A stretch of 63,392 bases of DNA, filler included, from Octopus bimaculoides (GCF_001194135.2; 5 parts of 5 records of this genome joined end to end with filler, not necessarily neighbours in it); one strand, 5' to 3'; counted from the whole stretch's first letter, positions 9,339-24,690 are shown. The notes: generated by a model from the letters alone, not told the origin. Program-made: numbers and translations.

Positions 9339-9500
9339 GAGCATTATCCTGATGGAAGAACACCTTTTGTCTTGAAACCAAAGATGGTCGTTTTTCTTCT
9401 AGCGCTGACTTAAGCCACTCAAGCTGCTCCCAGTAGACCTCCCTTGTTATCATTTGGTTTGGGTTTAAAAGTTAAAAGTGAACTAAACCTTTCATGTCCC
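9339..9500 (-). mobile_element. Mariner transposase fragment
   Basis: WDMKGLVHF*LLNPNQMITREVYWEQLEWLKSALEEKRPSLVSRQKVFFHQDNA. Confidence 0.85.
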
Positions 9501-10057
9501 GAATCTATCAGGAAAACTAAGATCCCTAACAATATAGGTTCTATGGTCATAGAGGCAGGCAAGCTGTCACACCGTGATATTTTATGGGACAGAGCCCTAT
9601 TTTATGGGACAGAGACATAGTTATACATAAGACACACTAAAGGAGGTTCAGACATTCACCAAGGAATAACTCTCGATTAAAAAGTTGAAGAAAATCAGAG
9701 AGACAGCTTTGTAGGAGGAAACTCCACAGATCCCCAATTGACATAGAGATCAAATGAAGAGAGTAGCACTGGATTGGATACACCATCACAAGACACCGTC
9801 CTGGGGTCACAAACTAGTCCCTTAGATAGAACCACCAGAGGAAAAAGAGAGAAGGGGCAGGGCACTCCTTGCAACGTGATCTGGAGAATGAAGTAAGATC
9901 TAGATGGAGTTGAGCCAATTGGATAGAAGGCCTAGGACAAGAATAAGGGAAGGGAAGCCGCCCTAGGAGGGGTTAAGAGCCTGGGCAAGTGACGGCCCAC
10001 ATGGTTGTGGTTACATCAATTTGTTTAATGTTTATCGTACAGAAAATCAATATTTAC

Positions 10058-10162
10058 CTTTGTTATTGGGACCAAAAGGCTCAGTTTGAAAGTAACTATG
10101 GCTCGGGTAAGAAGAACCATAAATACAACAAGGGCAGCATTTTCAAAGTCGGTCAACTGAAG
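10058..10162 (-). CDS. GCLC: GCLC-like exon (equivalent to exon 12)
   Basis: ttccag|CTT CAG TTG...ACA AAG|gtaaat; 105 nt; LQLTDFENAALVVFMVLLTRAIVTFKLSLLVPITK vs human [35 protein letters not shown]. Confidence 0.95.
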
Positions 10163-10201
10163 CTGGAAATATAGAAAATATACATACATACATGCATATA
10201 C

Positions 10202-10246
<45 letters not shown>

Positions 10247-11047
10247 CATATATATGGTTGTTATTATAATTATTATATCATATATATTTTTTATTATATT
10301 TATATATGTATTTTATTATATCATATATTTTATATATAAATAATATATATATGTATATATATATATATATATATATNNNNNNNNNNNNNNNNNNNNNNNN
10401 NNNNNNNNNNNNNNNNNNNNNNNNNNNNNNNNNNNNNNNNNNNNNNNNNNNNNNNNNNNNNNNNNNNNNNNNNNNNNNNNNNNNNNNNNNNNNNNNNNNN
10501 NNNNNNNNNNNNNNNNNNNNNNNNNNNNNNNNNNNNNNNNNNNNNNNNNNNNNNNNNNNNNNNNNNNNNNNNNNNNNNNNNNNNNNNNNNNNNNNNNNNN
10601 NNNNNNNNNNNNNNNNNNNNNNNNNNNNNNNNNNNNNNNNNNNNNNNNNNNNNNNNNNNNNNNNNNNNNNNNNNNNNNNNNNNNNNNNNNNNNNNNNNNN
10701 NNNNNNNNNNNNNNNNNNNNNNNNNNNNNNNNNNNNNNNNNNNNNNNNNNNNNNNNNNNNNNNNNNNNNNNNNNNNNNNNNNNNNNNNNNNNNNNNNNNN
10801 NNNNNNNNNNNNNNNNNNNNNNNNNNNNNNNNNNNNNNNNNNNNNNNNNNNNNNNNNNNNNNNNNNNNNNNNNNNNNNNNNNNNNNNNNNNNNNNNNNNN
10901 NNNNNNNNNNNNNNNNNNNNNNNNNNNNNNNNNNNNNNNNNNNNNNNNNNNNNNNNNNNNNNNNNNNNNNNNNNNNNNNNNNNNNNNNNNNNNNNNNNNN
11001 NNNNNNNNNNNNNNNNNNNNNNNNNNNNNNNNNNNNNNNNNNNNNNN

Positions 11048-11110
11048 GGCTCGGGTAAGAAGAACCATAAATACAACAAGGGCAGCATTTTCAAAGTCGG
11101 TCAACTGAAG
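11048..11110 (-). other. Second, gap-truncated copy of the exon-12-like sequence
   Basis: Identical by eye to the 5' part of exon 10058-10162, with its acceptor and adjacent intron microsatellite; runs into the N-gap at 11047. Confidence 0.85.
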
Positions 11111-11149
11111 CTGGAAATATAGAAAATATACATACATACATGCATATAC

Positions 11150-11194
<45 letters not shown>

Positions 11195-11623
11195 CATACA
11201 CATACACACACATGCACGCACGCAGGCACACACATGTATATAAACAAATAAAAAGAAGAAGAAAAAGAAAATTCTTTAACACATCTTTAATGATGCATTA
11301 CAATTGTTTCTGTACCAGTTCTACGTGCAACACCAGTTTACGCAAAAATTCGAAGTGAAAAATTCACGTTATGTTTGCGGTTTTAGACATTAGAGAGGCA
11401 CTTGATAAGACTTGCATCAAAAGTGTGCTAGGATGAGAATTCAAATACAGGTAGTGATATTAATATACAGGTGGTGATTTTGATATGGGCATTGGTATTA
11501 ATATACGTGAGTTATGTGTATACATCGGTAGTTATATGAATACAGTGATATTGAAGTGGAGGTAATGATATCACGACGAATGGAAACATCAATGTTTCAC
11601 GTGTGATGTTATAAAATAGGTGA

Positions 11624-11830
11624 TGGTGACGAGCTGGCAGAATCGTTAGCACACCAGGCAAAACACTTAGCGGAATTTTGTAAGTGTGTACGTTCTGAGT
11701 TCAAATTCTACCGAGGTCAATTTTGCTTTTCATTTCTTTCAGGGTCGATGAAATAAGTACCTGTTGATCACTGGGGTTGATGTAATCGACTACCCCTGCC
11801 CTAAAAATTTTAGACCTTGTGCTTGTAACA
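11624..11830 (+). mobile_element. tRNA-derived SINE, family 3 (gagctggcagaatcgttagc head)
   Basis: B box gagttcaaattc and body gaggtcga-ctttgcctttcatcc-ggggtcgat-aagtacc; copies near 2310-2515(-), 30480-30630(-), 41565-41760(-), 44799-44941(+), 49420-49610(-), 56240-56360(-), 59260-59440(-). Confidence 0.78.
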
Positions 11831-12302
11831 GAAAGTATGTTATATCATGGATGGGGGAGATATTAAGATGGGAAATGTGGCAGACAGAACTGTCATGTGT
11901 GGTGTGTGTGTGTGTGGGGGGGGGGCTTGTGTTTGTGCTTGCCTTTACACCTTAGAAACTGTTGCTGGTGTTTATGGAGATCAAGAAATAAATTCTAGAA
12001 TTAAAAAAATAAGTTCTAGAGTTGATATGATTGATTGAATCTTTAAAATTGTTTCTTCTAGCATGGCTGCTGTCCGATGGTTCAAACAAGTCGAAGAATA
12101 TATCAAACTGCACCAAATTCCACTTACAAAGTATCAATCAACCCAATGTAATTAGAAAATATTCTTGCAAGGAGTCTTGCAGTGAGATTGAACTCATAAC
12201 CATGCTGATATGAAGCCTACACCAAAAAGCTATGTCTGCACCTATATACAATGAAGCATACGGAAATATCTTTTACGGAGACAGTCTCTAGTAAAATGTT
12301 AC

Positions 12303-12389
12303 CTCCATTGTTCTGAATTCTATTTTCCATCCAGATTTCTCGTCAGGGAGTTTCAGTTTCAGGCTTTGCCAATTACTACCAATGACGGC
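12303..12389 (-). CDS. GCLC: GCLC-like exon (equivalent to exon 11)
   Basis: gttttaag|GCC GTC...ATG GAG|gtaaca; 87 nt; AVIGSNWQSLKLKLPDEKSGWKIEFRTME vs human [31 protein letters not shown]. Confidence 0.93.
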
Positions 12390-13551
12390 CTTAAAACAGA
12401 ATGTTAAACAAGGTTTTCCACTGATATAGAACATATACAACAATTTAATACAATATACTGTATTTATTTGTATGCAATATATAATCGCATATAATGCACA
12501 TTATTGGTTATGTAAATCAAAAGGCAACACCTCTCTTGCATAATAGACACTGGTTTTTCTATATATGAGAAATAAGTGTTTAGTCAGATTTATTATAATT
12601 GCTGCATCCTTAAATAAAGAAAAAGCNNNNNNNNNNNNNNNNNNNNNNNNNNNNNNNNNNNNNNNNNNNNNNNNNNNNNNNNNNNNNNNNNNNNNNNNNN
12701 NNNNNNNNNNNNNNNNNNNNNNNNNNNNNNNNNNNNNNNNNNNNNNNNNNNNNNNNNNNNNNNNNNNNNNNNNNNNNNNNNNNNNNNNNNNNNNNNNNNN
12801 NNNNNNNNNNNNNNNNNNNNNNNNNNNNNNNNNNNNNNNNNNNNNNNNNNNNNNNNNNNNNNNNNNNNNNNNNNNNNNNNNNNNNNNNNNNNNNNNNNNN
12901 NNNNNNNNNNNNNNNNNNNNNNNNNNNNNNNNNNNNNNNNNNNNNNNNNNNNNNNNNNNNNNNNNNNNNNNNNNNNNNNNNNNNNNNNNNNNNNNNNNNN
13001 NNNNNNNNNNNNNNNNNNNNNNNNNNNNNNNNNNNNNNNNNNNNNNNNNNNNNNNNNNNNNNNNNNNNNNNNNNNNNNNNNNNNNNNNNNNNNNNNNNNN
13101 NNNNNNNNNNNNNNNNNNNNNNNNNNNNNNNNNNNNNNNNNNNNNNNNNNNNNNNNNNNNNNNNNNNNNNNNNNNNNNNNNNNNNNNNNNNNNNNNNNNN
13201 NNNNNNNNNNNNNNNNNNNNNNNNNNNNNNNNNNNNNNNNNNNNNNNNNNNNNNNNNNNNNNNNNNNNNNNNNNNNNNNNNNNNNNNNNNNNNNNNNNNN
13301 NNNNNNNNNNNNNNNNNNNNNNNNNNNNNNNNNNNNNNNNNNNNNNNNNNNNNNNNNNNNNNNNNNNNNNNNNNNNNNNNNNNNNNNNNNNNNNNNNNNN
13401 NNNNNNNNNNNNNNNNCGACAGGCTTCTTTCAGTTTTCATTTTAAAAATCCACTCACAAGGGTTTGGTCGGTCTGAGGCCACAGCAGAAGACACTTGCCC
13501 AAAGTGCCACACAGTGGGACTGAAACCGGAACCATGTGGTTGGGAAGCAAG

Positions 13552-13585
<34 letters not shown>

Positions 13586-14578
13586 GGATTCTTTCATTTT
13601 CCATCTACGAAATCCACTCATAAGGCTTTGGTCGGCCCAAGGCTATAGTAGAAGATACTTGCCCAAGGTGTCACGCAGTGAGATTGAACTTGCAATCATG
13701 TGGTTGGGAAGCAAGCTTCTTACCACAGGACATCATTTTAAGATTAATTGCTCATTCATTTTTAGCATACTCGTTAAAATATGTCAAAACACCCATCAGA
13801 ACCTATACTTGTACAAAAGCTGCTTTTAGTGTCTTTTCTTATCCTCTTTTCCACTGTTGTCACCATTAACTGTTGAACTACATGTGAAATTTATGCTTCT
13901 CTACTTTTATGCTAAACATGTTACCCTTAAATATTGTTTTAGCCAATTATGTCTATGCATACAAGTCGGTCTTGGATTTCATGCAATGTATTAACCTGTC
14001 GGATTTTAACGACCTGTTAGTGATTAAGTCCTTAATCATCGTAGACTGTTTTCTTTGATATTTATACATCAGTTCTTTATATAAAGAGAATGCTATTTGT
14101 TGATAATTTAGGTGCTTATATTTTATCATTTACTTGTTTTAGTCATTGGACTGCAGACAAAGCCTGGTACTTACTCCGGTTATTTTTGCCAAACTGCTAG
14201 ATTACAAGGACGTAAAGAAACAAACATCGGTTGTCAAGCAATGATGGATACAAACATCAATAAAAAGACACACAATCACTCAAATATATATACATACAAA
14301 CACACACACACACGTACATGTGCACACACACACACAAGAATAGATAGACAGACAGATAGATACATGATATGCTTTCAGTTTTTGTCTATCTAAGCCACTC
14401 ACAAAGCTATAGTAGAAAACACTTGCACAAACTGCTACAGAGTGAGATTGAACCCAAGACCAAGCATTGAAGGCCCATAAAAGGAAAAAATTTATCCATT
14501 ATAGAATTAATTTCTGGCATCATAACTCCCATAGATTTATTTGTAAATTATCAAAAGAATTGAACAAATATATTTTAC

Positions 14579-14691
14579 CTGAATGTGATCCATATCATTC
14601 ATTATGTCTTGATTGATCTTCTCTTTGAATAAAACGATTGGGTCTCTGACCAGGAGTTGGGCAACGTATTTGGACATCATTTCATCAACAC
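14579..14691 (-). CDS. GCLC: GCLC-like exon (equivalent to exon 10)
   Basis: aatcag|GT GTT GAT...ATT CAG|gtaaaa; 113 nt; GVDEMMSKYVAQLLVRDPIVLFKEKINQDIMNDMDHIQ vs human [38 protein letters not shown]. Confidence 0.93.
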
Positions 14692-14939
14692 CTGATTAAT
14701 TATCAAATATTTTAATCAGTTTTAATAATTTATAAAATGGTTGCATACTTTTACGAGGAAACTGATTAACACAGGCAGACACTGGCAAGCATACACGCAC
14801 ACATACACATCCATGCACATACACATATGCACACACGCACGCAAACATGCACACACACATACACTGACAGGTGCACATACACACGCACGCACATACACAC
14901 ACACAAACACACACACATACACACACATGTACATCACAT

Positions 14940-15330
14940 ATCAGATGGAAGGATCCCAAAAGATCTCCTGTACAAGAGCACGAGGACGTCTGCAAGAGAG
15001 ATATGATGTCAATAGATTTGGATAACCTGATATGGGAGGAGGTCGCAAATGTTTGCCCACGCTGGAGGCAAATACTGCGAAAGGGGATGAAGTGAGGGGA
15101 AGAAAAACAGGAACTTGCAGTCAAAGAAAACCACACTCGACGGAAGAAAAAACCAGTAGCACCGGCAGAGAGCTCCTTCAAATGCAGTTGCTGTATGCAT
15201 GGCTGTCACTCCTGTGTGGGCCTCTACAGCCACAACAGACGCTGCGCCACCATCAGCAGCTGACACAATTTCTTTGGGTGCAGATTCATGGCTTCGCGAG
15301 ACAGACAACTGCATACTACAAATGCACACA
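14940..15330 (+). mobile_element. RTE-clade LINE 3' fragment
   Basis: HEDVCKRDMMSIDLDNLIWEEVANVCPRWRQILRKG, followed by a C/H-rich tail (CHSCVGLYSHNRRC). Confidence 0.75.
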
Positions 15331-15530
15331 CATACACGCACACCCACACATATGCACGCGCATGATCTTTTATTCCAGTCTCCATCATTGGGTTTGTAGC
15401 CAGAATAAGTTATTGCCTTCAAGTCAATCGGTTTACCAAAAGAGTTACGTCCCCTGTACAGAATTACCTACCTTCGTAAAGCACTGTAGTTGTAATTATC
15501 AATTTAAAACATCTATGCTGTTATACACAT

Positions 15531-15813
15531 GGAGGCGCAATGGCCCAGTGGTTAGGGCAACGGACTCGCGGTCATAGGATCGCGGTTTTGATTCCCAGAC
15601 CGGGCTTTGTGAGTGTTTATTGAGCGAAAACACCTAAAGCTCGAAAAGGCTCCGGCAGGGGATGGTGGCGAAACCCCGCTGTACTCTTTCACTACAACTT
15701 TCTCTCACTCTTTCTTCCTGTTTCTGTTGTGCCTGTAATACAAAGGGTCAGCCTTGTCACACTCTGTGTCACTCTGAATATCCCCGAGAACTACGTTAAG
15801 GGGTACATGTGTC
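15531..15813 (+). mobile_element. tRNA-derived SINE, family 1 (ggaggcgcaatggcccagtggttagg head)
   Basis: tRNA-like A box (TGGCCCAGTGG) and B box-like segment; same body recurs at 33306-33666, 39580-39936 and 62075-62990. Confidence 0.85.
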
Positions 15814-16888
15814 NNNNNNNNNNTCATTTTTCTTCCTTTCTCTCCCCCTCTCTCACATTTCTTGGCCCTCTCTTTCTTTAATTCCCACTATTTCCCATTT
15901 GTTTATCTCCCCTGCGCCTTTCCCTTTGTCTGATATTTTTCTAATCCTCCAATCCTGCTGTCCCCTGCCCATCTCTCCTCCTTCCACGTAACCGGTGTCC
16001 GGCCAGCCTTGATCTTTCTTTCTTGGCCTGATTGCCAACTGTCAACACGTCTTGTGTCCATCTCCTATGTTCCTGCCTTTAGGCTTTTACTTCATACACG
16101 CCAGCTCAATCGGAATTGTTCTCAGTCAAAAGACGCCTGTTGTTATTTCTTGTTGTAATCGTAATTGTGTACCATGTTCTCCGATTTTTATCTTTTTTTT
16201 TTTCGTCTCTGTTGCCGTACACATTCGCTAGCTTTCTTACAAAGGAGTCTAATGCTTTTAGCTTGGACATTTTGGGGGACAACCAGATCGAACCATCTCA
16301 AGTGTAACTGTCTGAAATAGTCATGACTTCTGGTACTTGACTGATGAAAGAAAGCCAAAAATGACTCATCTTTCTTTGCCTGTCCTTCTAATTGTTGTTT
16401 TTCTTGTCCACCTTTGTGTCATCCATCTGTCCGAACGTTTTAATGCCCTCTATTGCGTTTTTGTTCCATTTATATATATATATATATACATACAATTAAC
16501 TAGAAAGTTGTATTTATTATTTTTCATCAGCCTGTTTACAACCTGTGCTGAAGGAGAAATAAGGTGGCTTTTGGTGCCATTTGGTATCTTTCTCTAGCAT
16601 GTTGGAACGGATAATCCGATCCCTTTAATATGATTATGTATATACTAAATTTAGTATATAAAATTACCTGCAAGGTTTTTATTTCACGCTGACTACTTGA
16701 CAAAATCATTAAAGTGATTTTATCCTTATGTCTCTAAAAAATATAAATATACAAGCAATATTTTACTTTTATTCTGGTCTCCATCAATGAGTTAAAGCCA
16801 GAATATGTTACTACTTTCCAGTCAATTAGTTTACCTACAAATTTATGTCCCCTGTACAGAGTTACCTACCTTCACAGCTGTAACTAAC

Positions 16889-16932
<44 letters not shown>

Positions 16933-17399
16933 AAATATTCATATACACGCATTCATTCGACTATAAGACCCCCAACTCCTCTCCATTCCCCTTCCCCTTT
17001 ATATAATCATTCTATTCTTCTAAGCACCCATTACACTCTCGGAGTGGTTGGCATTAAGAAGGGGATCCAGCAGTAGAAAACCATCCCAAATGAGACTGGA
17101 GTCTGGTGCAGCCTTCCAGCCTATCAGCCCTGGTCAAACCGTCCAGCCAATGCCAGCATGGACAATGGACGCTAAATGATGATGATGATGATGATGTAGG
17201 TCTTGTCCTATTAATTTCCCTCAACACCCCAATTTCTTGCTCCTCAAACTCTTTCCTGGTTCTCTTTCATCCCTTGTCTCCCACCCATCTCTCTACCCCT
17301 CTCCTCTCCCTTACTCCTAATCTTGCACCTTCTTTTTTTCCTCACCTCGCTCCTTTTCTTTCGCACTGTCTCCCTGAATATAACAAAAGTTGTGTATGA

Positions 17400-17403
17400 G
17401 AGA

Positions 17404-17468
<65 letters not shown>
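17400..17468. repeat. (GA)n microsatellite
   Basis: Directly visible. Confidence 0.95.
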
Positions 17469-17472
<4 letters not shown>

Positions 17473-18079
17473 TGTTCTATTTCTCTTAGAAATAAAAATG
17501 CTACTTCCACAATCTCAATAATCTACTCTTCTCATGGCATACAAGCTTATCCAAATCCAGAAACTTCCCTATGAAAACATAGGACAGGTGACGTATTTTG
17601 TAAAAATTCTATAAAATTTGAACACATTGTCGATTATCTCAAACAAAATTATAAATTTTTGGAATGATTCTTAAAACTAGACACAGAATATAGAAGAGTT
17701 GTATAATAGCCCTGAATTATTGGAATGGCGGTTGTTCTTGTATGGCAAGTGATTTGATCTAAAGATTGTGCTGAAACTACAATACTCATATGCCAACCAT
17801 TCATAAAGAGGCAAAGACCCCCTTCGATCATGAATGACCATAGGAATACACCTAGAAAATACCCCTCCAAGGCACAAGTCTGGGCAAGGTGGTTTGAGGA
17901 AGACTATATAAATAAAGTGTCTTGCTCAAAAACACAACACACAGCCTGGTCCAGGAATTGAACTCACTTCCTCATGATTGTGAGCCCAGTGCTCTAACCA
18001 CTTAGCCATGCACAATCTACTGTCCATATATATATGTATATATTATGCATACATACGTACATACATACATATAGAGTAA

Positions 18080-18415
18080 AGACCCACTTCGGTTATGAAT
18101 GACCATGGTATTGCACCTAGAAAGTTACTCTCTGAGGCACAAGTCTGGACATGGTCTTTTTTTATGGAAGACCAGCAGTCGCCAATGCATACCAGCTCCC
18201 ACTCTCCAGGCCACCGATATTATCCAAGGGAAAAGCAGAGGGATCCAATACAGCTTGGCACCAGTGACATCACAACTCATTTCTACAGCTGAGTGAACTG
18301 GAGCAACATGAAATAAATGTCTTGCTCTAGAACACAACACGCAACCCGGTCTGGGAATTGAACTCACTACTTCAAGATTGCAGCCAGATGCTCTAACCAC
18401 TGAGCCATGTGCCTT
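18080..18415 (-). mobile_element. tRNA-derived CORE-like SINE, family 4
   Basis: tggctcagtggttagagc head and gagcaagac...gttgctccagttcactcagctg body; related copies near 17800-18010(-), 48690-48850(+), 55730-55930(-). Confidence 0.7.
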
Positions 18416-18752
18416 CAAATTTTAGAGAAACTGTTTTTAACTTCACTAAGTCATTTATTATTGAGTGCCAAAATCTTCATCACTGACCAGGTTACAAACA
18501 ACACAATGAAAATTTTGATACCAAGTAGTAAATGGGTGAATGAAGTTAATAGTTTCTGTGAATTTTTTAATGGTTAACAGAAGTCATGGATGCCGTAACT
18601 GTTTAATGAATTAAATTATGATTAAATATTTACAACACAGTAGCAAAGTAAAAGGAACTGTGTTAATTAATTCTGAGAACTGGTCAATGATAATATTTTT
18701 ATATAAAATGAATTAAGAATTATTTTTATGTTTTTAGAGAATTTCTAAATAC

Positions 18753-18891
18753 CTTCAGCTTTCAGTAATTCATACTGCTCACGGTCATAACTGAAATCAT
18801 AATCATTATAAAATTGGTCGCTCACAGAGAGATAACTGCTTACTGTATCAAAACGGGATTTCTTCATCAAAATGTTACCGTTTGTCAAAGG
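18753..18891 (-). CDS. GCLC: GCLC-like exon (equivalent to exon 9)
   Basis: ccttttag|CCT TTG...GAA G|gtattt; 139 nt; PLTNGNILMKKSRFDTVSSYLSVSDQFYNDYDFSYDREQYELLKAE vs human PLKNNNYRISKSRYDSIDSYLSKCGEKYNDIDLTIDKEIYEQLLQE. Confidence 0.93.
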
Positions 18892-19339
18892 CTAAAAGGA
18901 GAAGATATAAAGTCAAAACAACTCAAAGTTCCAAGAATAAGCTGCTGTTTTTGACATGAAGAGAAGATATTATTAAGTAAGAATGATGGCACAAAAGCAC
19001 AAAGATATGCTACTATTTATGACATGGAAACAATATATTTGTCCACTTCTCACAAAAGAAATTGAAATAACTGAAAAATTAGTTAAATATTCTCAAAAAT
19101 ACTTCCTGACGAGACATATCTATTCTGGAAGCACACATCACTAACAAGTGGAAAATAGTATATTGTTACCATTTAGTGGGGACTGGAAGGTAGAGCAGCT
19201 AGAGACTCTTAGTTAAAACCCAATCTTGTGAATCCTGCCGAATATTTACAGGCAATTAAAGACATCTTAATTAAAGATGTCTTAATAAAAGACATCTTAA
19301 TAAAAGACGTCTTAAAAGACACCTTAAAAGACATCTCTA

Positions 19340-19660
19340 GTCTGGTGACATGTAAAAGCACCATTTGAATGTTGTCGATGCCAGTGCCCCCTGAGTTACT
19401 CCCATGCCAGTGACACATAAAAAGCACCATCCAAATGTGGTCGATGCCAGTGCTGCCTGACTGGCTCCGAAGCCGGTGGCATGTAAAAAGCACCCACTAC
19501 ACTCTCAGAGTGGTTGGCATTAGCAAGGGCATCCAGCTGTAGAAACCTTGCCAGATCAGACTGGAGCCTGGTGCAGCCTGCTGACTTGCCAGTCCTCTGT
19601 CAAACCGTCCAACCCATACCAGCATGGAAAAACAGACATTAAACGATGATAATGATGAGG
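19340..19660 (+). mobile_element. SINE/LINE-tail repeat ending in (GAT)n
   Basis: gagtggttggcatta...gggcatccagc...gtcaaaccgtccaaccc...ttaaacgatgat; copies at 17030-17195 and 20864-20905. Confidence 0.7.
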
Positions 19661-19763
19661 ATGATAATTTTAAATGACTTTTACTAAGCAGTTAGGGAGG
19701 ATATTTTTATGTATTTCTTTCACAGTTTTTATTTTACAGTGAAGTAGATATATTGAAACTTAC

Positions 19764-19880
19764 TTCTAAACCCAGTTCTTGTCTGGTACGGTCATCACAA
19801 GACTGAGAAATAGCACACCAACGACAGTCTGTATCAGACAAAAGTCCTCGATAAACTGGAGCAGCTGCTGTTAGAGCTAA
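19764..19880 (-). CDS. GCLC: GCLC-like exon (equivalent to exon 8)
   Basis: tttccag|TTA GCT...TTA GAA|gtaagt; 117 nt; [39 protein letters not shown] vs human [39 protein letters not shown]. Confidence 0.95.
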
Positions 19881-20297
19881 CTGGAAATTGAAATTCTTAA
19901 AATTCATTCATTAAAGATTACATGAAACACCATAAAACAATGTATAATAAGCAATTAAAGATAAAAATGAAATTTTAAACTTAGAGGTGTGTATAATGGT
20001 TTCTGCTTTAGGCATAAGGCAAAGAATCTTGATGGCAGAATGTCTGATACAATCAATGTCTGTTATTTTTATACCATCAACCCAGAATTGATAACTGGCA
20101 AACTTGACCTTGATGATATTCGAACTCAAAAAAAACAAAATACTAGAAGGAATACAACAGGGAATTTCTTCCGATGCTTTAATGATCCTACCTTTGGAGT
20201 TAGAATTAATGTAACACAATATTTTCTCTATAAATCTATAGAAAGAAGTTATTACATAATCTACATCTAATACTATGAGGAATAGATGGGATAATAT

Positions 20298-20336
<39 letters not shown>

Positions 20337-21709
20337 NNNNNNNNNNNNNNNNNNNNNNNNNNNNNNNNNNNNNNNNNNNNNNNNNNNNNNNNNNNNNNNN
20401 NNNNNNNNNNNNNNNNNNNNNNNNNNNNNNNNNNNNNNNNNNNNNNNNNNNNNNNNNNNNNNNNNNNNNNNNNNNNNNNNNNNNNNNNNNNNNNNNNNNN
20501 NNNNNNNNNNNNNNNNNNNNNNNNNNNNNNNNNNNNNNNNNNNNNNNNNNNNNNNNNNNNNNNNNNNNNNNNNNNNNNNNNNNNNNNNNNNNNNNNNNNN
20601 NNNNNNNNNNNNNNNNNNNNNNNNNNNNNNNNNNNNNNNNNNNNNNNNNNNNNNNNNNNNNNNNNNNNNNNNNNNNNNNNNNNNNNNNNNNNNNNNNNNN
20701 NNNNNNNNNNNNNNNNNNNNNNNNNNNNNNNNNNNNNNNNNNNNNNNNNNNNNNNNNNNNNNNNNNNNNNNNNNNNNNNNNNNNNNNNNNNNNNNNNNNN
20801 NNNNNNNNNNNNNNNNNNNNNNNNNNNNNNNNNNNNNNNNNNNNNNNNNNNNNNNNNNNNNNNGCTAGCATGGAAAGCGGACGTTAAACGATGATGATGA
20901 TGATGAAATATATCCCACTCTGTTTATGTCTCTCTCTCTCTCTCTCTTTCCCACTCTATTTCTGTCTCTGTCTCTCTGTCTCTGTCTCTCCCATTCTGTT
21001 TATGCTGTTTATGTCTCTCTCTCACCCTCTCTCTCTTTCTCTCCCTCTCTGTTGAGCATATTTCTCTTTATGTCTATGAAGAGTTCAGTTGATAAATTTT
21101 AATGTCTCTCCCTCACCCTCTCTTTCTCTATTCTTCCTATCTGTTTATAGTTCTGCACACACCAAAAAGTATTGTTGACAAAACAAACTGAATACCCAGT
21201 CAGTTGTGCCAAATTGTCTCATTATTTTCATACAACACAGTGTGTTATATATTCTATAATAAAGTTTAAAGACAGTTTAAGTTTGTATGTGCAGTGCAAT
21301 TTGAAACTTAAATTGCTTGAAAAATAACCAGTATTTAAGCACTTCATGTTTATTCCCATTTATGTTATTTTCTTCGTATCATTTGGTATGAAAACGTATT
21401 TTGTGCATGTCACAAAATACATATGGAAGCAAAACAAAACAAATGTTTTGTTTATCAATTATTTAGTTACACTATTTTACGTACACTTCATTAACAAAGA
21501 ATGATCGTTAATTACAGTGTGTAAATTACATAATCAAAATGCATTCTTAATTCTTCAGAAACATGTAGCCTTTACATATAACATTATTGGTTGTAGTTGG
21601 TGCTTATCCCTTTGCCGTTCAATAATCCAATAATGTTACGAATAAGGTTTGATGATTAGATAATACATTTTGAAAATAGAAATATTATTATTTCTAAATC
21701 TCTCTAATG

Positions 21710-22006
21710 CAGGGGTTTTCAAACTGTAGTCCGCGGACCACAGGGGGTCCGCAAGGACAAGACAGGGGGTCCGTGGACAGCAAATACTTTTTATGGGCAA
21801 TTTGATTTTATATATGGTTTTTAATCGAAATCTTTTAATTGACAATAAACCTATTTGTTAAAAACTGTTAAATAAATAAATGTAAAAATATATGTTATTT
21901 TAAGCAAATATTTATGTATAAATTTCATAAGCGTTTATAAGGGAGTCCCTAAGGTAAAGCCTGAAATATAAAGGGGTCCGCAAGTCAAAAAGTTTGAAAA
22001 CCCCTG
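21710..22006. mobile_element. hAT-type MITE (297 bp)
   Basis: TIRs CAGGGGTTTTCAAACT / AGTTTGAAAACCCCTG; 8-bp target duplication ctctaatg / ctctaaag (7/8 match). Confidence 0.88.
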
Positions 22007-23175
22007 CTCTAAAGGATACTACGGCAGCAGTCCATTACAACCTTCAAACAAGAGAGGGCATCAGCTTCCCCATGCTGGTTCAAGTGTCAACAGACTAGTT
22101 TCAGAGTATTTGCCCTTTATCAATGTGGAGTAGCCAAACCCAGCAGGTGTCACTGTTGACTGTTTGAAGGTTTATATATATTCAGTGGAACACATCTACA
22201 GGTTTTCAAAACTAAAAATATTGTTATTTCTAAATCTTTCTAAAAGAGACTATGACAGCAGTACTGGGTATTAATAGTTATCGCCAAGCTAACATGGCAG
22301 TCCAGAAAAATAGGACAAATGCTGCCGTTGATTAGTTCCAAGAGGCCATTGCCTAGCGATGCGTGCTGGATTTGGCTACTCCACATTGATAAGGGGCAAA
22401 TATCTCGAAACTAGTCTCTGGATGCTTGATCCAGCATAGGAAAGCTGATGACCTCTCCTGTTTGAAGGTTGTAATGGACACAGATTCGTGTGTCACATAG
22501 CTAGCTAGAGGCGATGGCTTCTTGGAGCTAATCAACAGCAGCATTCGTCCCACTTTTCTGGACTGCCATGTTAGCTTGACGATAACTGTTAATACATTTT
22601 GATTGTGCAGCAAATAATCGTTCTTTGTTAATGAAGCATACGTAAGGTGGTGTAGCCAAATATCTTATAAGCAATCACATGACTCATGCTTTGTTTGTGT
22701 GTGTGTATGTGTGTGTGTGTGTGTCTTGACAGTCTACTCTGTGTGTGTGCATGTGTTTCTCTGTGTGTGTGTGTGTGTGTGTGCGTGCATGCACATGTGT
22801 ATGTTGACAGTCTACTTTATGGTCACATTATGTTGTTTGACTGTGTAGTTTGACAGTGTAGTCAATGTTGATAATATAACGACTGTTAAAAGTATTTAGC
22901 TGTTGGCAGTATGTATGGTATATGTTGGCAATATATATAAACAGTATAGTTTATGCTGATATTCTAGTTTATACTGACAGTATAATATTTGTTAACAGTG
23001 CAACATATTTTGTAGGGCGGTCTATATTGACAGAATATGTTAATAATGTACAGTTAAATGCCTGGTTTAGAATAGTTAACAATGTAGTATTCTATTAAAC
23101 TTCAGAATCTAAGCTCTACTGAAAATATGATTTCTGTTGATATCTTAACAAAAGGATAAATAAAGTTATACCTAC

Positions 23176-23393
23176 CATTATTGGAGTAAGAGGTACCAGA
23201 TTGTCATAGAGATAAGCAGCTTCTTTTATATCGGCAGCTTGAAATGTAACTTGAAGAGAACAACAACCACCCCCAAACGTGAAGGAATCCATGTAAATAT
23301 GGCCTGGTTTCAAATTTTTCTTCATTTCTTTATTGTCTCCATATTCAGACAAATCTTCTCCATATGGCATCATGGTATTTTTATCTTTATAAA
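23176..23393 (-). CDS. GCLC: GCLC-like exon (equivalent to vertebrate exons 6+7)
   Basis: tttcag|TT TAT AAA...ATA ATG|gtaggt; 218 nt; YKDKNTMMPYGEDLSEYGDNKEMKKNLKPGHIYMDSFTFGGGCCSLQVTFQAADIKEAAYLYDNLVPLTPIM vs human FKDKNTP...[25 protein letters not shown]...ARYLYDQLATICPIV. Confidence 0.95.
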
Positions 23394-23887
23394 CTGAAAC
23401 AAGAATTTTTTTTTTTTTTTTGAGACAAAATCAATTACAAAATAAGCTAAACGATATTTTGAAGAAGTATCTTGTTTTGCATAAATTAACATATCTAATT
23501 ACATTATCATGTTGCTTAGAAAAAAAATTAAGAAATATATTTCAAGGAAATTATGGTTTGAGCAAAAGATCTGAAATTTTGGCACTGTGTATACATAATA
23601 CTAAATATCTTTTGTGTAAGTACCAGCCCCTTTGAATATATATCCTTCAGCTGTAAGGATATGTGCACCATGGGCTGAAAACCAATCCGACATCCCATTG
23701 TTTCATCAGAGTCTTAACATGAAGTATTTCTTTATACAAGAAATTGTTGAAATAACTGGAACATTTTCACAATAGTAGCGTGATGATAATCATTTAAGGG
23801 TTGTTACCAAGTTTGTAGAATCATTTATATGTTTATGTTGTGATGTCTTATAAGAAACAGAAGCTATTTTATGGTCAGTATACTCAC

Positions 23888-23946
23888 GTGGTACATTGAC
23901 TGCAGTTCTTTCTTTCCTTCTGTACATCATATTTTTAATTCGATCT
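23888..23946 (-). CDS. GCLC: GCLC-like exon (equivalent to vertebrate exon 5)
   Basis: ttttcccaatcaag|A GAT CGA...GTA CCA C|gtgagt; 59 nt; encodes (R)DRIKNMMYRRKERTAVNVP(L), aligning to human STLTRNIRHRRGEKVVINVPI; length and phases match recalled human exon 5. Confidence 0.85.
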
Positions 23947-24179
23947 CTTGATTGGGAAAATATGAAATATTTAATACGTGAAAATATTACAATTTTGAAG
24001 ACAGGGGTTCCATTTTAATACTTTTTGATAAAAACCCTGGCTGCAATCTCTACCCATTCTATCATACAAAACAGCTCTATTAATCTTTAGTCTTTCTTAC
24101 ATAAGACAAACAGTTCGGATATTCTCAGTTTTGAAACACTACTTTGTAATAAAGTACTCAATATATTTTTATATAGAGA

Positions 24180-24414
24180 GTTGTATGTATATATATATAT
24201 ATATCGTCGTCGTCGTCGTCGTCGTTTAACGTCCGCTTACATACATACATGTATGTATGTGTATATATATGCGTATATATGTATGTATATATATATACAT
24301 ATATGTACATATATATATATACACTCACACATACATGTATGTGTATATATATATGTATATATATACATATATGTATATATATGCGTATATATATATATAT
24401 ATGTATGCATATAT

Positions 24415-24495
<81 letters not shown>

Positions 24496-24625
24496 TATAT
24501 ATATATATATATATGAACACATATATACATATATGTATGCATATATATATATACATGCATCTATGTATATATATACATAGATATCATATATATATATATG
24601 TATATATATATACATACGTATCTAC

Positions 24626-24673
<48 letters not shown>

Positions 24674-24690
24674 ATATATATATATATTTA
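24180..24690. repeat. Compound (TA)n/(TATG)n/(TATC)n microsatellite
   Basis: Directly visible; source of several spurious ORFs. Confidence 0.95.

What the first reader, a model, noticed from the sequence alone, without database searches (positions are those of the whole stretch)
10058..23946. Intact but strongly divergent GCL-family gene with a remodelled active site: candidate gamma-glutamyl ligase of altered specificity, or a pseudoenzyme
Seen: seven exons splice into one stop-free frame of about 279 aa, with exon sizes matching recalled human GCLC sizes. Several motifs that are normally near-invariant in animal and fungal GCL are replaced: MDAMGFGMG(N/C)xCLQ becomes MDSFTFGGGCCSLQ (Met to Phe, Gly to Thr, Met to Gly, pre-LQ Cys to Ser); DHFE/NIQSTNWQTMRFKPP becomes DHIQ/AVIGSNWQSLKLKLP; KSRYDS becomes KSRFDT. 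Core residues persist (LQVTFQ, DCRW, KSR, NWQ, GWxxEFRxME, QLTDFEN). Established: in the yeast Gsh1 structure these segments line the glutamate, cysteine and nucleotide sites (recalled; verify). Inference: an intact frame with changes concentrated around the substrate pocket suggests a duplicated GCL under selection that may ligate glutamate to an acceptor other than cysteine, or escape glutathione feedback.
Basis: partly seen in the sequence, partly recalled or inferred. Interest (0 to 1): 0.78.

Follow-up and report, generated by a model that had tools for sequence, protein, structure and literature searches.

The report
Octopus-specific divergent glutamate-cysteine ligase paralog
This is the middle of an intact, selectively maintained extra copy of the glutathione-synthesis enzyme GCLC in Octopus bimaculoides; it is one of at least six octopod-specific copies that keep the catalytic core but have a rebuilt substrate pocket, and the normal GCLC gene sits on another chromosome.

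Summary
Seven GT-AG exons on the minus strand (23946-10058) splice into one open 279-aa frame. All four N gaps lie in introns and hide no residues. The window is Octopus bimaculoides chromosome CM046627.1. The gene is already predicted in RefSeq as XP_052833099.1, "GCLC-like".

It is not the housekeeping GCLC. That gene (XP_052823647.1) is canonical and lies on another chromosome. The window gene is paralog "A" of an octopod-only clade: six ortholog groups in Octopus, one sequence in Argonauta, and at least three of them clustered within about 275 kb in O. vulgaris.

Thirty-seven of 124 positions invariant across 207 canonical GCLCs are replaced here. The ATP, Mg and acyl-phosphate residues in the window (Q268, R313, W445, K451, E470, R472, yeast numbering) persist. 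The glutamate-pocket residues M258, G259, M262, C266 and Y362, and also R468, are changed.

Against the O. vulgaris ortholog, dN/dS is 0.24-0.31 (p = 2e-9 against neutrality), so this is not a pseudogene. Biochemical function is untested. My best guess is a ligase with altered specificity; a regulatory isozyme or a pseudoenzyme remain possible. The second copy of exon 7 beside the gap at 10377-11047 is an assembly artefact. Similar divergent copies arose independently in bivalves, a brachiopod, chelicerates and fungi.

The parts
23888..23946 (-). Exon 6 of 16 of GCLC-like paralog A (first exon in the piece). It encodes (R)DRIKNMMYRRKERTAVNVP. It starts in codon phase 2 and needs an upstream exon that lies beyond the piece edge.
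   Evidence: AG/GT flanks. The upstream exon is found at L001 29419-29535, across a 4.3-kb gap. The O. vulgaris counterpart is L002 47247-47305.
23176..23393 (-). Exon 7. It carries the remodelled pocket loop MDSFTFGGGCCSLQVTFQ (23292-23239). In yeast numbering M258 becomes F, G259 T, M262 G and C266 S; Q268 is kept.
   Evidence: The roles of M262 and Q268 in the glutamate pocket come from PMC5613772.
19764..19880 (-). Exon 8: [21 protein letters not shown]...GLE. The Arg at the position of yeast R313 (DCRW, 19829-19818; in L. donovani numbering listed among the glutamate-pocket residues, PMC5613772) is kept.
18753..18891 (-). Exon 9, with KSRFDT (18861-18844). Y362, whose hydroxyl H-bonds the glutamate alpha-carboxylate in yeast Gsh1, is Phe here. 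The O. vulgaris ortholog has Tyr.
   Evidence: PMC5613772 Table 3.
14579..14691 (-). Exon 10: VDEMMSKYVAQLLVRDP...DHIQ. The canonical sequence is H-x-AHLFIRD...DHFE.
12303..12389 (-). Exon 11: AVIGSNWQSLKLKLPDEKSGWKIEFRTME. W445, K451, E470 and R472 are kept. Changed are F437I and E438Q (in the preceding exon), Q441I, S442G, T443S, R449K, F450L, P452L and R468K.
10058..10162 (-). Exon 12 (last exon in the piece): LQLTDFENAALVVFMVLLTRAIVTFKLSLLVPITK. This is the genuine copy. The gene continues beyond the piece edge.
   Evidence: Its upstream intron is colinear with O. vulgaris. The downstream exons are at L001 52228 onward.
11048..11198 (-). Artefactual second copy of the 5' part of exon 12 plus 88 nt of intron. 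It is 151/151 identical to 10100-10250 and abuts the gap at 10377-11047.
   Evidence: O. vulgaris has a single copy. The same artefact occurs in the neighbouring paralog D (L001 gap 71379-71473). It was carried into XP_014785336.1 and A0A0L8G164 but not into XP_052833099.1.

Best explanation
Shown.
- The window holds exons 6-12 of 16 of "paralog A" (XP_052833099.1) of an octopod-specific family derived from the cephalopod GCLC gene.
- The family is tandemly expanded. It has six ortholog groups (A-F) in Octopus and one sequence in Argonauta.
- A canonical GCLC is retained on another chromosome.
- The gene is intact and under purifying selection. Its protein evolves about 2-3 times faster than the canonical GCLC.
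- It keeps the GCS fold and the residues that bind Mg2+ and ATP and stabilise the gamma-glutamyl-phosphate (E50 and E52 in an upstream exon; Q268, R313, W445, K451, E470 and R472 in the window).
- The residues that line the glutamate pocket and its surroundings are replaced. M258, G259 and M262 differ from paralog to paralog. C266 is Ser or Val, and R468 is Lys, in all 12 paralogs. Y362 is Phe in 10 of 12.

Inferred.
- The protein is still an ATP-dependent carboxylate-amine ligase that works through an acyl-phosphate intermediate.
- Its substrate specificity, donor handling or regulation has shifted away from housekeeping gamma-Glu-Cys synthesis.
- The variable xxFGxG loop tunes that specificity differently in each paralog.
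For: Identity and locus. The window is 100% identical to O. bimaculoides CM046627.1, with the same gaps. P0114 is 100% identical to the spliced product.

Canonical copy elsewhere. These are O. sinensis XP_029635280.1, O. bimaculoides XP_052823647.1, O. vulgaris CAI9722052.1 and Argonauta P0234. All carry canonical residues and sit on different chromosomes from the paralogs.

Clade. The 12 paralogs are monophyletic with 100% bootstrap. They are 52-54% identical to Octopus canonical GCLC, against 43-47% to other canonical GCLCs. They share 5 exclusive residues with cephalopod canonical GCLCs, against 0-1 for other groups.

Tandem cluster. In O. vulgaris, E, B and A lie at 13.35-13.61 Mb of OX597840.1. 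In O. bimaculoides, A and D lie tail to tail.

Selection. All 14 O. bimaculoides exons that could be compared have AG/GT-conserved, indel-free, stop-free O. vulgaris counterparts. dN/dS is 0.24-0.31, with dS 0.11-0.14, close to the intron divergence of 0.105. The binomial test against neutrality gives p = 1.8e-9. The clade includes Argonauta, so it predates the Octopus-Argonauta split.

Site pattern. 37 of 124 canonical-invariant columns are changed. At 18 of these, the same new residue is present in at least 10 of 12 paralogs, which points to a new constraint rather than decay. The catalytic residues are kept. Residue roles are taken from PMC5613772 Table 3.

Fold. Pfam GCS scores 304 bits for the window fragment. 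An AlphaFold2 model of paralog B has pLDDT 87 and pTM 0.91, and matches yeast Gsh1 3IG5 with TM 0.87.

Precedent. Other members of the same ligase superfamily have changed their amine acceptor, for example the 1-naphthylamine GS-like enzyme 8X6Z.
Against: - No activity or expression data were available here.
- In O. bimaculoides the exon that encodes the Mg ligands E96 and E103 is not visible because it falls among assembly gaps. The A-gene models in both species skip it, and skipping keeps the frame.
- The O. vulgaris A ortholog reads WGDK instead of WGDE, so the E50 Mg ligand is lost. That would argue against catalysis in that species.
- Groups F and E have lost R313, R361 and W445 (F) or W445 (E), so part of the family is probably not a ligase.
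- dN/dS of about 0.25-0.3 is relaxed for a core enzyme.
- Y362F and M262G could simply weaken glutamate binding rather than create a new specificity.
Confidence: 0.45

Rival explanations
1. It is still a glutamate-cysteine ligase. On this reading it is a tissue- or stage-specific isozyme with altered kinetics or regulation, for example weaker glutamate affinity, insensitivity to GSH feedback, or independence from GCLM.
For: All residues listed for Mg, ATP, cysteine-amine contact and catalysis are retained in paralogs A-D and in Argonauta. The fold is preserved. The paralogs lack the roughly 40-aa C-terminal tail, and most replace an otherwise invariant Cys (human 553) with Pro. My recollection that human Cys553 is involved in GCLM coupling is unverified.
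Against: A fully canonical GCLC is retained in every octopod examined, so no second GCL is needed. Six paralogs with a pocket loop that differs from paralog to paralog are hard to explain by regulation alone. The Tyr that H-bonds the glutamate alpha-carboxylate and the pocket Met are both replaced.
Confidence: 0.25
2. It is a pseudoenzyme. On this reading the fold is kept for a non-catalytic role such as binding, scaffolding or a structural function, in the way cephalopod S-crystallins derive from GST.
For: O. vulgaris A has E50K. The A and E gene models skip the frame-preserving 111-nt exon that carries E96 and E103. Groups F and E have lost R313, R361 and/or W445. The proteins evolve 2-3 times faster than the canonical GCLC. 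The tandem expansion is reminiscent of enzyme-derived crystallins (from my own knowledge).
Against: O. bimaculoides A keeps E50 and E52 and every catalytic residue in the window. The E96/E103 exon is intact, with AG/GT flanks, in the O. vulgaris A, B and E loci. Q268, K451, E470, R472 and E475 are invariant in all 12 paralogs, which is unexpected if catalysis were dispensable.
Confidence: 0.22
3. It is a decaying pseudogene, or an artefact of a fragmented assembly.
For: 31% of the locus is N. One exon is artificially duplicated. The last exon and the E96/E103 exon cannot be seen in O. bimaculoides. Early gene models were truncated.
Against: No stop or frameshift occurs in the 14 visible exons, and all splice sites are conserved with O. 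vulgaris. dN/dS is significantly below 1. The gap-free O. vulgaris loci contain all 16 exons.
Confidence: 0.04

Closest known systems
Canonical eukaryotic glutamate-cysteine ligase catalytic subunit (GCLC / yeast Gsh1, Pfam PF03074; structure 3IG5)
   Same: The Pfam domain is the same: 304 bits for the fragment and 455 bits for full-length paralog B. The fold matches at TM 0.87. At least one checked exon boundary coincides with a human GCLC exon boundary. E50, E52, Q268, R313, W445, K451, E470 and R472 are the same. The window part is 58% identical to the O. bimaculoides canonical GCLC.
   Different: 37 of 124 otherwise invariant positions are replaced. These include M258, G259, M262, C266, Y362, H412, F437, E438, R449, F450, P452 and R468. 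There is no C-terminal tail. It is not the ortholog, which is XP_052823647.1 on another chromosome. It belongs to a multi-copy tandem family.
Independent divergent GCLC-like paralogs in other invertebrates and fungi: Mytilus XP_076117635.1, Mactra KAL4221496.1, Lingula XP_013418129.1, Tachypleus XP_076326353.1, Halotydeus KAI1289761.1, and fungal proteins from Aspergillus bertholletiae, Cyphellophora and Dimargaris
   Same: Most are shorter than canonical GCLC (roughly 575-625 aa), though one unnamed Logan sequence is 669 aa. They show non-canonical states at the same pocket positions (M258, G259, M262, C266, Y362) while the catalytic core is kept. For Mactra, a canonical GCLC was also recovered from the same species (P0251).
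   Different: They are not one clade. The Mytilus, Mactra and Tachypleus sequences are each closest to the canonical GCLCs of their own lineage, and the divergent sequences are only 36-44% identical to the octopod paralogs and to each other; for the mite and Lingula sequences no close canonical GCLC was in the comparison set, so their origin is not placed. The octopod clade is the most divergent at the 11 key sites, with 11 of 11 changed. None has a described function.
Carboxylate-amine ligase superfamily members with a changed acceptor (glutamine-synthetase-like gamma-glutamyl-arylamine synthetase 8X6Z/8WWU; E. coli YbdK 1R8G)
   Same: They share the superfamily fold, detected by Foldseek. 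The chemistry is ATP plus a carboxylate giving an acyl-phosphate, which is then attacked by an amine. Specificity is set by pocket loops.
   Different: The relationship is remote (7-12% identity, TM 0.25-0.45). They are bacterial. This is a functional analogy only, not membership.
Cephalopod S-crystallins (GST-derived tandem gene family; from my own knowledge)
   Same: They are also a cephalopod-lineage tandem expansion of a glutathione-pathway enzyme with a remodelled active site.
   Different: S-crystallins are lens structural proteins, and most have lost activity. Nothing here links the GCLC-like genes to the lens or to very high expression.

Membership tests
GCS / glutamate-cysteine ligase family (Pfam PF03074) | Significant match to the family profile | tested here: met
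   PF03074 scores 304 bits (cut-off 25) for the 279-aa fragment, over profile positions 1-234 of 372. phmmer against yeast Gsh1 3IG5 gives E = 1.2e-52.
GCS / glutamate-cysteine ligase family (Pfam PF03074) | GCS fold (glutamine-synthetase-like antiparallel beta-funnel) | tested here: met
   The AlphaFold2 model of full-length paralog B (81% identical to the window protein) has pLDDT 87.4 and pTM 0.91. Its Foldseek TM to 3IG5 is 0.87. For the window gene itself this is inferred from the paralog.
Catalytically competent GCL | Mg2+ ligands E50, E52, E96, E103 and E470 (yeast numbering) | tested here: inconclusive
   E470 is present in the window. E50 and E52 are present in upstream exon 1 (L001 10001-10150). 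The exon with E96 and E103 is not visible in O. bimaculoides because of gaps, but it is intact in the O. vulgaris ortholog (L002, about 33514-33624). O. vulgaris A has E50K.
Catalytically competent GCL | Catalytic and nucleotide residues R472, K451 and Q268; cysteine-site W445; R313 | tested here: met
   All are retained in the window protein. Residue roles come from PMC5613772 Table 3.
Catalytically competent GCL | Glutamate-pocket residues Y362 (H-bond to the alpha-carboxylate) and M262 | tested here: not met
   Y362 is Phe and M262 is Gly. In addition M258 is Phe, G259 Thr, C266 Ser and R468 Lys.
Catalytically competent GCL | Makes gamma-glutamylcysteine; inhibited by GSH; activated by GCLM | not testable with these tools
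   This needs recombinant enzyme assays.
Housekeeping GCLC ortholog | One-to-one orthology with GCLC of other animals, and canonical near-invariant residues | tested here: not met
   The canonical ortholog is XP_052823647.1, on another chromosome. The window protein differs at 37 of 124 invariant columns, against 2 for the canonical copy. It belongs to a separate clade with 100% support.
Processed or decaying pseudogene | Loss of introns, stops or frameshifts, and dN/dS near 1 | tested here: not met
   Introns are retained and GT-AG is conserved. There are no stops or indels in 14 exons compared with O. vulgaris. dN/dS is 0.24-0.31, with p = 1.8e-9 against neutrality.

The most novel reading that the evidence does not exclude
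The octopod GCLC-like tandem family, together with the independently arisen analogues in bivalves, a brachiopod, chelicerates and fungi, is a recurrently evolved and so far unrecognised class of ATP-dependent gamma-glutamyl (or related acyl) ligases. These would make products other than gamma-Glu-Cys. The variable xxFGxG pocket loop and position 362 would set a different substrate for each paralog.
Probability: 0.3. Interest if true: 0.75.

Novelty: new variant of a known kind. Interest (0 to 1): 0.55.

Why it matters
GCLC is normally a single-copy, extremely conserved enzyme that is rate-limiting for glutathione synthesis. No natural eukaryotic paralog with a different job is described in the literature I could search.

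Here an animal lineage keeps the canonical gene and in addition maintains, under purifying selection since before the Octopus-Argonauta split, at least six tandem copies. Their phosphoryl-transfer machinery is intact but their substrate pocket is rebuilt, and it differs from copy to copy. The same positions are remodelled independently in other invertebrates and in fungi.

If these proteins are active ligases, they point to unknown gamma-glutamyl metabolites or modifications in cephalopods. They would also be a natural experiment on how GCL specificity and feedback control are encoded. If they are inactive, they are a new enzyme-derived protein family in octopods.

There is also a practical point. 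Octopus redox and transcriptome studies that count "GCLC" reads may be mixing up to seven genes.

Tried and rejected
1. N-terminally truncated partial duplicate. The first hits (XP_014785336, XP_014785340, XP_014788601; about 400 aa) suggested this. I rejected it: later models and the loci show upstream exons.

2. Loss of the E96/E103 exon in paralog A. The exon is skipped in the P0113, P0114 and P0115 models. I rejected real loss: the exon is intact with AG/GT flanks in the gap-free O. vulgaris A, B and E loci. In O. bimaculoides the interval is riddled with gaps. Whether skipping is a real isoform remains open.

3. No canonical GCLC in octopods. Searches listed none.

4. An ancient pan-bilaterian paralog. 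The NJ tree places the clade outside all animal canonical GCLCs. I rejected this as long-branch attraction. Pairwise identity and exclusive shared residues tie the clade to cephalopod canonical GCLC. The other divergent paralogs that could be placed (Mytilus, Mactra, Tachypleus) each tie to canonical GCLCs of their own lineage.

5. A gamma-glutamyl-amine (biogenic amine-inactivating) synthetase. That activity is described in gastropods, whose amine catabolism is said to differ from that of cephalopods (PMC6454038, PMC4472778). Gastropods do not have this clade. There is no support for this idea.

6. Shared 3' exons between tandem genes. I rejected this: each O. vulgaris gene has its own last exon.

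7. Literature. Five searches for octopus or cephalopod with GCLC, glutamate-cysteine ligase or cysteine ligase found nothing on this family. The JBC papers on the yeast Gsh1 structure were not held, so residue roles come from PMC5613772.

8. Other look-ups. No tRNA or Rfam hit was found in the piece. P0001 could not be located by exact look-up. The canonical gene's DNA was too long to fetch, so I could not compare exon sizes with the canonical gene.

Full report
**1. What is in the window**

The usable piece (9339-24863, 36% G+C) is bounded and interrupted by N runs. I used a recalled human GCLC fragment only as a locator. With it, tblastn found six collinear minus-strand matches plus one duplicate. 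Reading the sequence around them defined seven exons: 23946-23888, 23393-23176, 19880-19764, 18891-18753, 14691-14579, 12389-12303 and 10162-10058. Each is preceded by AG and followed by GT. They total 838 nt in one stop-free frame of 279 aa.

**2. Gap test**

The program asked for this test first.
- All four N runs fall in introns.
- In alignments with yeast Gsh1 and with human, arthropod, fungal and mollusc GCLCs, each exon continues exactly where the previous one stops. No coding sequence is hidden in a gap.
- The gap-free O. vulgaris ortholog locus (L002) has the same seven exons, with identical lengths and order and nothing between them.

One gap is not innocent. The 151 bp at 11048-11198 are identical to 10100-10250, so the first 63 nt of exon 12 and 88 nt of intron appear twice around the gap at 10377-11047. 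O. vulgaris has one copy, and its upstream intron is colinear with the 10162 copy. The two window copies diverge inside a TG/TA microsatellite. This is an unmerged contig overlap. The same artefact splits the same exon of the neighbouring paralog (L001 gap 71379-71473). It was translated into XP_014785336.1 and UniProt A0A0L8G164, which repeat LQLTDFENAALVVFM..., but not into XP_052833099.1.

**3. Identity**

The piece is 100% identical, gaps included, to Octopus bimaculoides chromosome CM046627.1 in GCA_001194135.2. The spliced product is 100% identical to XP_052833099.1, named "glutamate--cysteine ligase catalytic subunit-like" (P0114). So the gene is already predicted.

The locus (L001) shows five further exons upstream and three downstream. 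Many gaps remain: 31% of the locus is N. The gap-free O. vulgaris paralog loci show 16 exons per gene. The window therefore holds exons 6-12.

**4. It is a paralog, and the canonical gene exists elsewhere**

The first two protein searches found only "-like" proteins from Octopus bimaculoides, O. vulgaris, O. sinensis and Argonauta hians at 63-100% identity. After those came canonical GCLCs at 44-54%. Those searches cap hit length at about 1.745 times the query length, which hid anything longer than 642 aa.

A longer profile query recovered canonical 649-aa GCLCs from O. sinensis (XP_029635280.1) and Argonauta (P0234). The same 90% cluster contains O. bimaculoides XP_052823647.1 and XP_014785471.1 and O. 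vulgaris CAI9722052.1. These lie on 148-177-Mb chromosomes, whereas the paralogs lie on 20-40-Mb chromosomes. The canonical proteins carry every canonical residue and differ at only 1-4 of the 124 invariant columns.

**5. The family**

An NJ tree groups the 12 paralog sequences with 100% support. It resolves six ortholog groups in Octopus, each with 100% support where two species are available:
- A: O. bimaculoides and O. vulgaris
- B: O. sinensis and O. vulgaris
- C: O. bimaculoides and O. vulgaris
- D: O. bimaculoides and O. sinensis
- E: O. vulgaris only
- F: O. bimaculoides and O. sinensis

The Argonauta sequence is sister to all of these.

Gene positions:
- In O. vulgaris, E (13.346-13.389 Mb, +), B (13.393-13.455 Mb, +) and A (13.528-13.611 Mb, -) lie within about 275 kb of OX597840.1.
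- C is on the same chromosome.
- In O. bimaculoides, A and D are tail-to-tail neighbours.

The NJ tree places the clade outside all animal canonical GCLCs. I read that as long-branch attraction, for two reasons. The paralogs are 52-54% identical to Octopus canonical GCLC and about 50% to a cephalopod-like canonical sequence, but only 43-47% to any other canonical GCLC. They also share five exclusive residues with cephalopod canonical GCLCs, against 0-1 for gastropods, bivalves, arthropods, annelids or deuterostomes.

In a library of 1.84 billion cluster representatives, the whole clade collapses to one representative. The next best hit is only 46-47% identical. So there is no intermediate relative, for example in squids, in the data searched. 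The duplication therefore happened in the cephalopod lineage, before the Octopus-Argonauta split, and was followed by tandem expansion in Octopus.

**6. Selection**

All 14 O. bimaculoides A exons that are visible have O. vulgaris counterparts of identical length, with conserved AG/GT and no stop.
- 34 of 515 residues differ.
- dN = 0.032 and dS = 0.10-0.14, giving dN/dS of 0.24-0.31. For the window exons alone it is 0.19.
- dS matches the divergence of flanking intron, 0.105.
- Non-synonymous changes make up 49% of changes, against 79% expected under neutrality (p = 1.8e-9).
- Between the same species pair the canonical protein is 96.3-96.5% identical and the paralog pairs 89.6-92.8%. Between Octopus and Argonauta the figures are 86.6% and 59-63%.

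The paralogs are therefore constrained but evolve about 2-3 times faster than the canonical gene.

**7. What changed and what did not**

Across 207 canonical sequences of at least 560 aa, 124 columns inside the window part are at least 97% invariant. The window protein differs at 37 of them. At 18 of those 37, the same new residue is present in at least 10 of 12 paralogs.

Residue roles come from the ScGcs column of Table 3 and the text of PMC5613772. In yeast numbering:
- Kept in all 12 paralogs: E52, Q268, N444, K451 (ADP phosphate), E470 (Mg) and R472 (gamma-carboxylate/phosphate).
- Kept in most: D49, E50, E96, E103, R313 and W445 (cysteine carboxylate).
- Changed in all 12: M258, G259 and M262 (M262 is the pocket Met, equivalent to L. 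donovani Met322), to five to seven different residues each; C266 to Ser or Val; R468 to Lys.
- Changed in 10 of 12: Y362 to Phe. Its hydroxyl H-bonds the glutamate alpha-carboxylate.
- The strand-loop HFENIQSTNWQTMRFKPP becomes HIQ-IIGSNW(Q/H)-LKLKLP.
- Group F has also lost R313, R361 and W445. Group E has lost W445.

The window gene (A) keeps every catalytic residue in the window. Upstream it keeps WGDEIEY.

An AlphaFold2 model of paralog B is confident (pLDDT 87.4, pTM 0.91). It superposes on yeast Gsh1 with TM 0.87. Pfam GCS scores 455 bits for paralog B against 592 bits for the canonical octopus protein.

**8. Caveats for paralog A**

- The 111-nt exon encoding WxPEYxxYMxEG, which carries the Mg ligands E96 and E103, is absent from the A models of both species and from the O. 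vulgaris E model. Skipping it keeps the frame.
- That exon is nevertheless intact, with AG/GT flanks, in the O. vulgaris A, B and E loci.
- In O. bimaculoides the interval contains four gaps, so its state there is unknown.
- The O. vulgaris A exon 1 reads WGDK, so the E50 Mg ligand is lost there.
- Two of the A-ortholog differences fall on pocket positions: M262 is G in one species and A in the other, and Y362 is F in one and Y in the other. I did not run a formal test on this, and I would not expect two hits among the dozen or so listed contact sites to be significant.

**9. Interpretation**

The retained metal, ATP and acyl-phosphate residues are invariant across six paralog groups and Argonauta. 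New residues are fixed at many formerly invariant sites. The pocket loop differs from paralog to paralog on a conserved glycine scaffold. This is the pattern expected for a ligase family diversifying its substrate handling. I give that reading 0.45.

Two other readings remain open. The first is an isozyme that still makes gamma-Glu-Cys under different regulation (0.25). The second is a pseudoenzyme (0.22), which is favoured for groups F and E and hinted at for A by E50K in O. vulgaris and by the exon-skipped models. A decaying pseudogene or an assembly artefact is unlikely (0.04).

**10. Wider context and novelty**

I checked the 150 best family representatives at 11 key pocket sites.
- The octopod clade is the most divergent, with all 11 changed.
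- Others reach 6-9 changes. Those with names are GCLC-like proteins of Mytilus, Mactra, Lingula, a mite, Tachypleus and several fungi.
- Where a close canonical GCLC was in the comparison set (Mytilus, Mactra, Tachypleus), each is closest to that of its own lineage. All are only 36-44% identical to the others. These are therefore independent duplications that remodel the same positions.
- I found no paper describing any of them.

The gene itself is already annotated. What is new is its recognition as part of a selectively maintained, pocket-remodelled GCLC-derived family.

Noticed in passing
window 11048-11198 vs 10100-10250 (gap 10377-11047); also L001 gap 71379-71473: Exon 12 and its adjacent intron are duplicated on both sides of a gap. 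This is an unmerged contig overlap at a microsatellite. The same artefact hits the same exon of the neighbouring paralog D. It is translated into XP_014785336.1 and UniProt A0A0L8G164.
   Followed up: yes
L002 about 33514-33624 (O. vulgaris A); L004 16312-16422; L003 about 32517-32627: A 111-nt exon encodes the Mg ligands E96 and E103. It is intact in the genome but left out of the gene models for O. bimaculoides A, O. vulgaris A and O. vulgaris E. Skipping it keeps the reading frame, so a ligand-less isoform is possible.
   Followed up: partly
L002 28026-28175 (O. vulgaris ortholog, exon 1): The O. vulgaris ortholog reads WGDK where O. bimaculoides and all other paralogs read WGDE, so the E50 Mg ligand is lost. 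The annotated O. vulgaris model does not use this exon.
   Followed up: partly
L001 56870-56949 (A), L001 about 69017-68940 (D); O. sinensis F isoform X2 (P0121): The frame stays open for about 25 codons past the donor site of exon 15. The read-through peptide is similar in three paralogs: GKMIHLFSSILNKCYYKHSTLKFSIE, GKMVHLFSTILNK... and GETIHLFSSILNKFYLK... O. vulgaris A has a stop after 10 codons. This could be an alternative short C-terminus or simply recent shared intron sequence.
   Followed up: no
proteins P0344, P0384, P0364, P0358, P0347/P0502, P0478, P0488, P0426, P0453: Independent divergent GCLC-like paralogs, roughly 575-625 aa, exist in Mytilus, Mactra, Lingula, a mite, Tachypleus and several fungi. 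They are non-canonical at the same pocket positions, and the Mytilus, Mactra and Tachypleus sequences are each closest to canonical GCLCs of their own lineage.
   Followed up: partly
window 13422-13717, 17813-18160, 17908-18380, 15398-15475/16796-16873, 19354-19485: The introns contain short interspersed repeats in two or three copies at about 80% identity. No tRNA or Rfam match was found.
   Followed up: partly
window 24262-24687, 17398-17469, 14790-14927, 10232-10376: The introns contain dense microsatellites: (TA)n over about 425 bp, (GA)36, and CA-rich and AT-rich arrays. Two of them coincide with contig ends, which explains the gaps.
   Followed up: partly
window 11966-12457 vs L001 72449-72944: About 500 bp around exon 11, including intron, are 86% identical between paralogs A and D. 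That is only about 1.5 times the O. bimaculoides-O. vulgaris intron divergence. It suggests either a relatively recent A/D split or local gene conversion.
   Followed up: no
pairwise identities: Octopus paralogs are slightly closer to Octopus canonical GCLC than to Argonauta canonical GCLC (54.0% against 52.2%). The Argonauta paralog shows the reverse (46.3% against 47.4%). The effect is small. It could be noise, rate differences, or occasional conversion between canonical and paralog genes.
   Followed up: no
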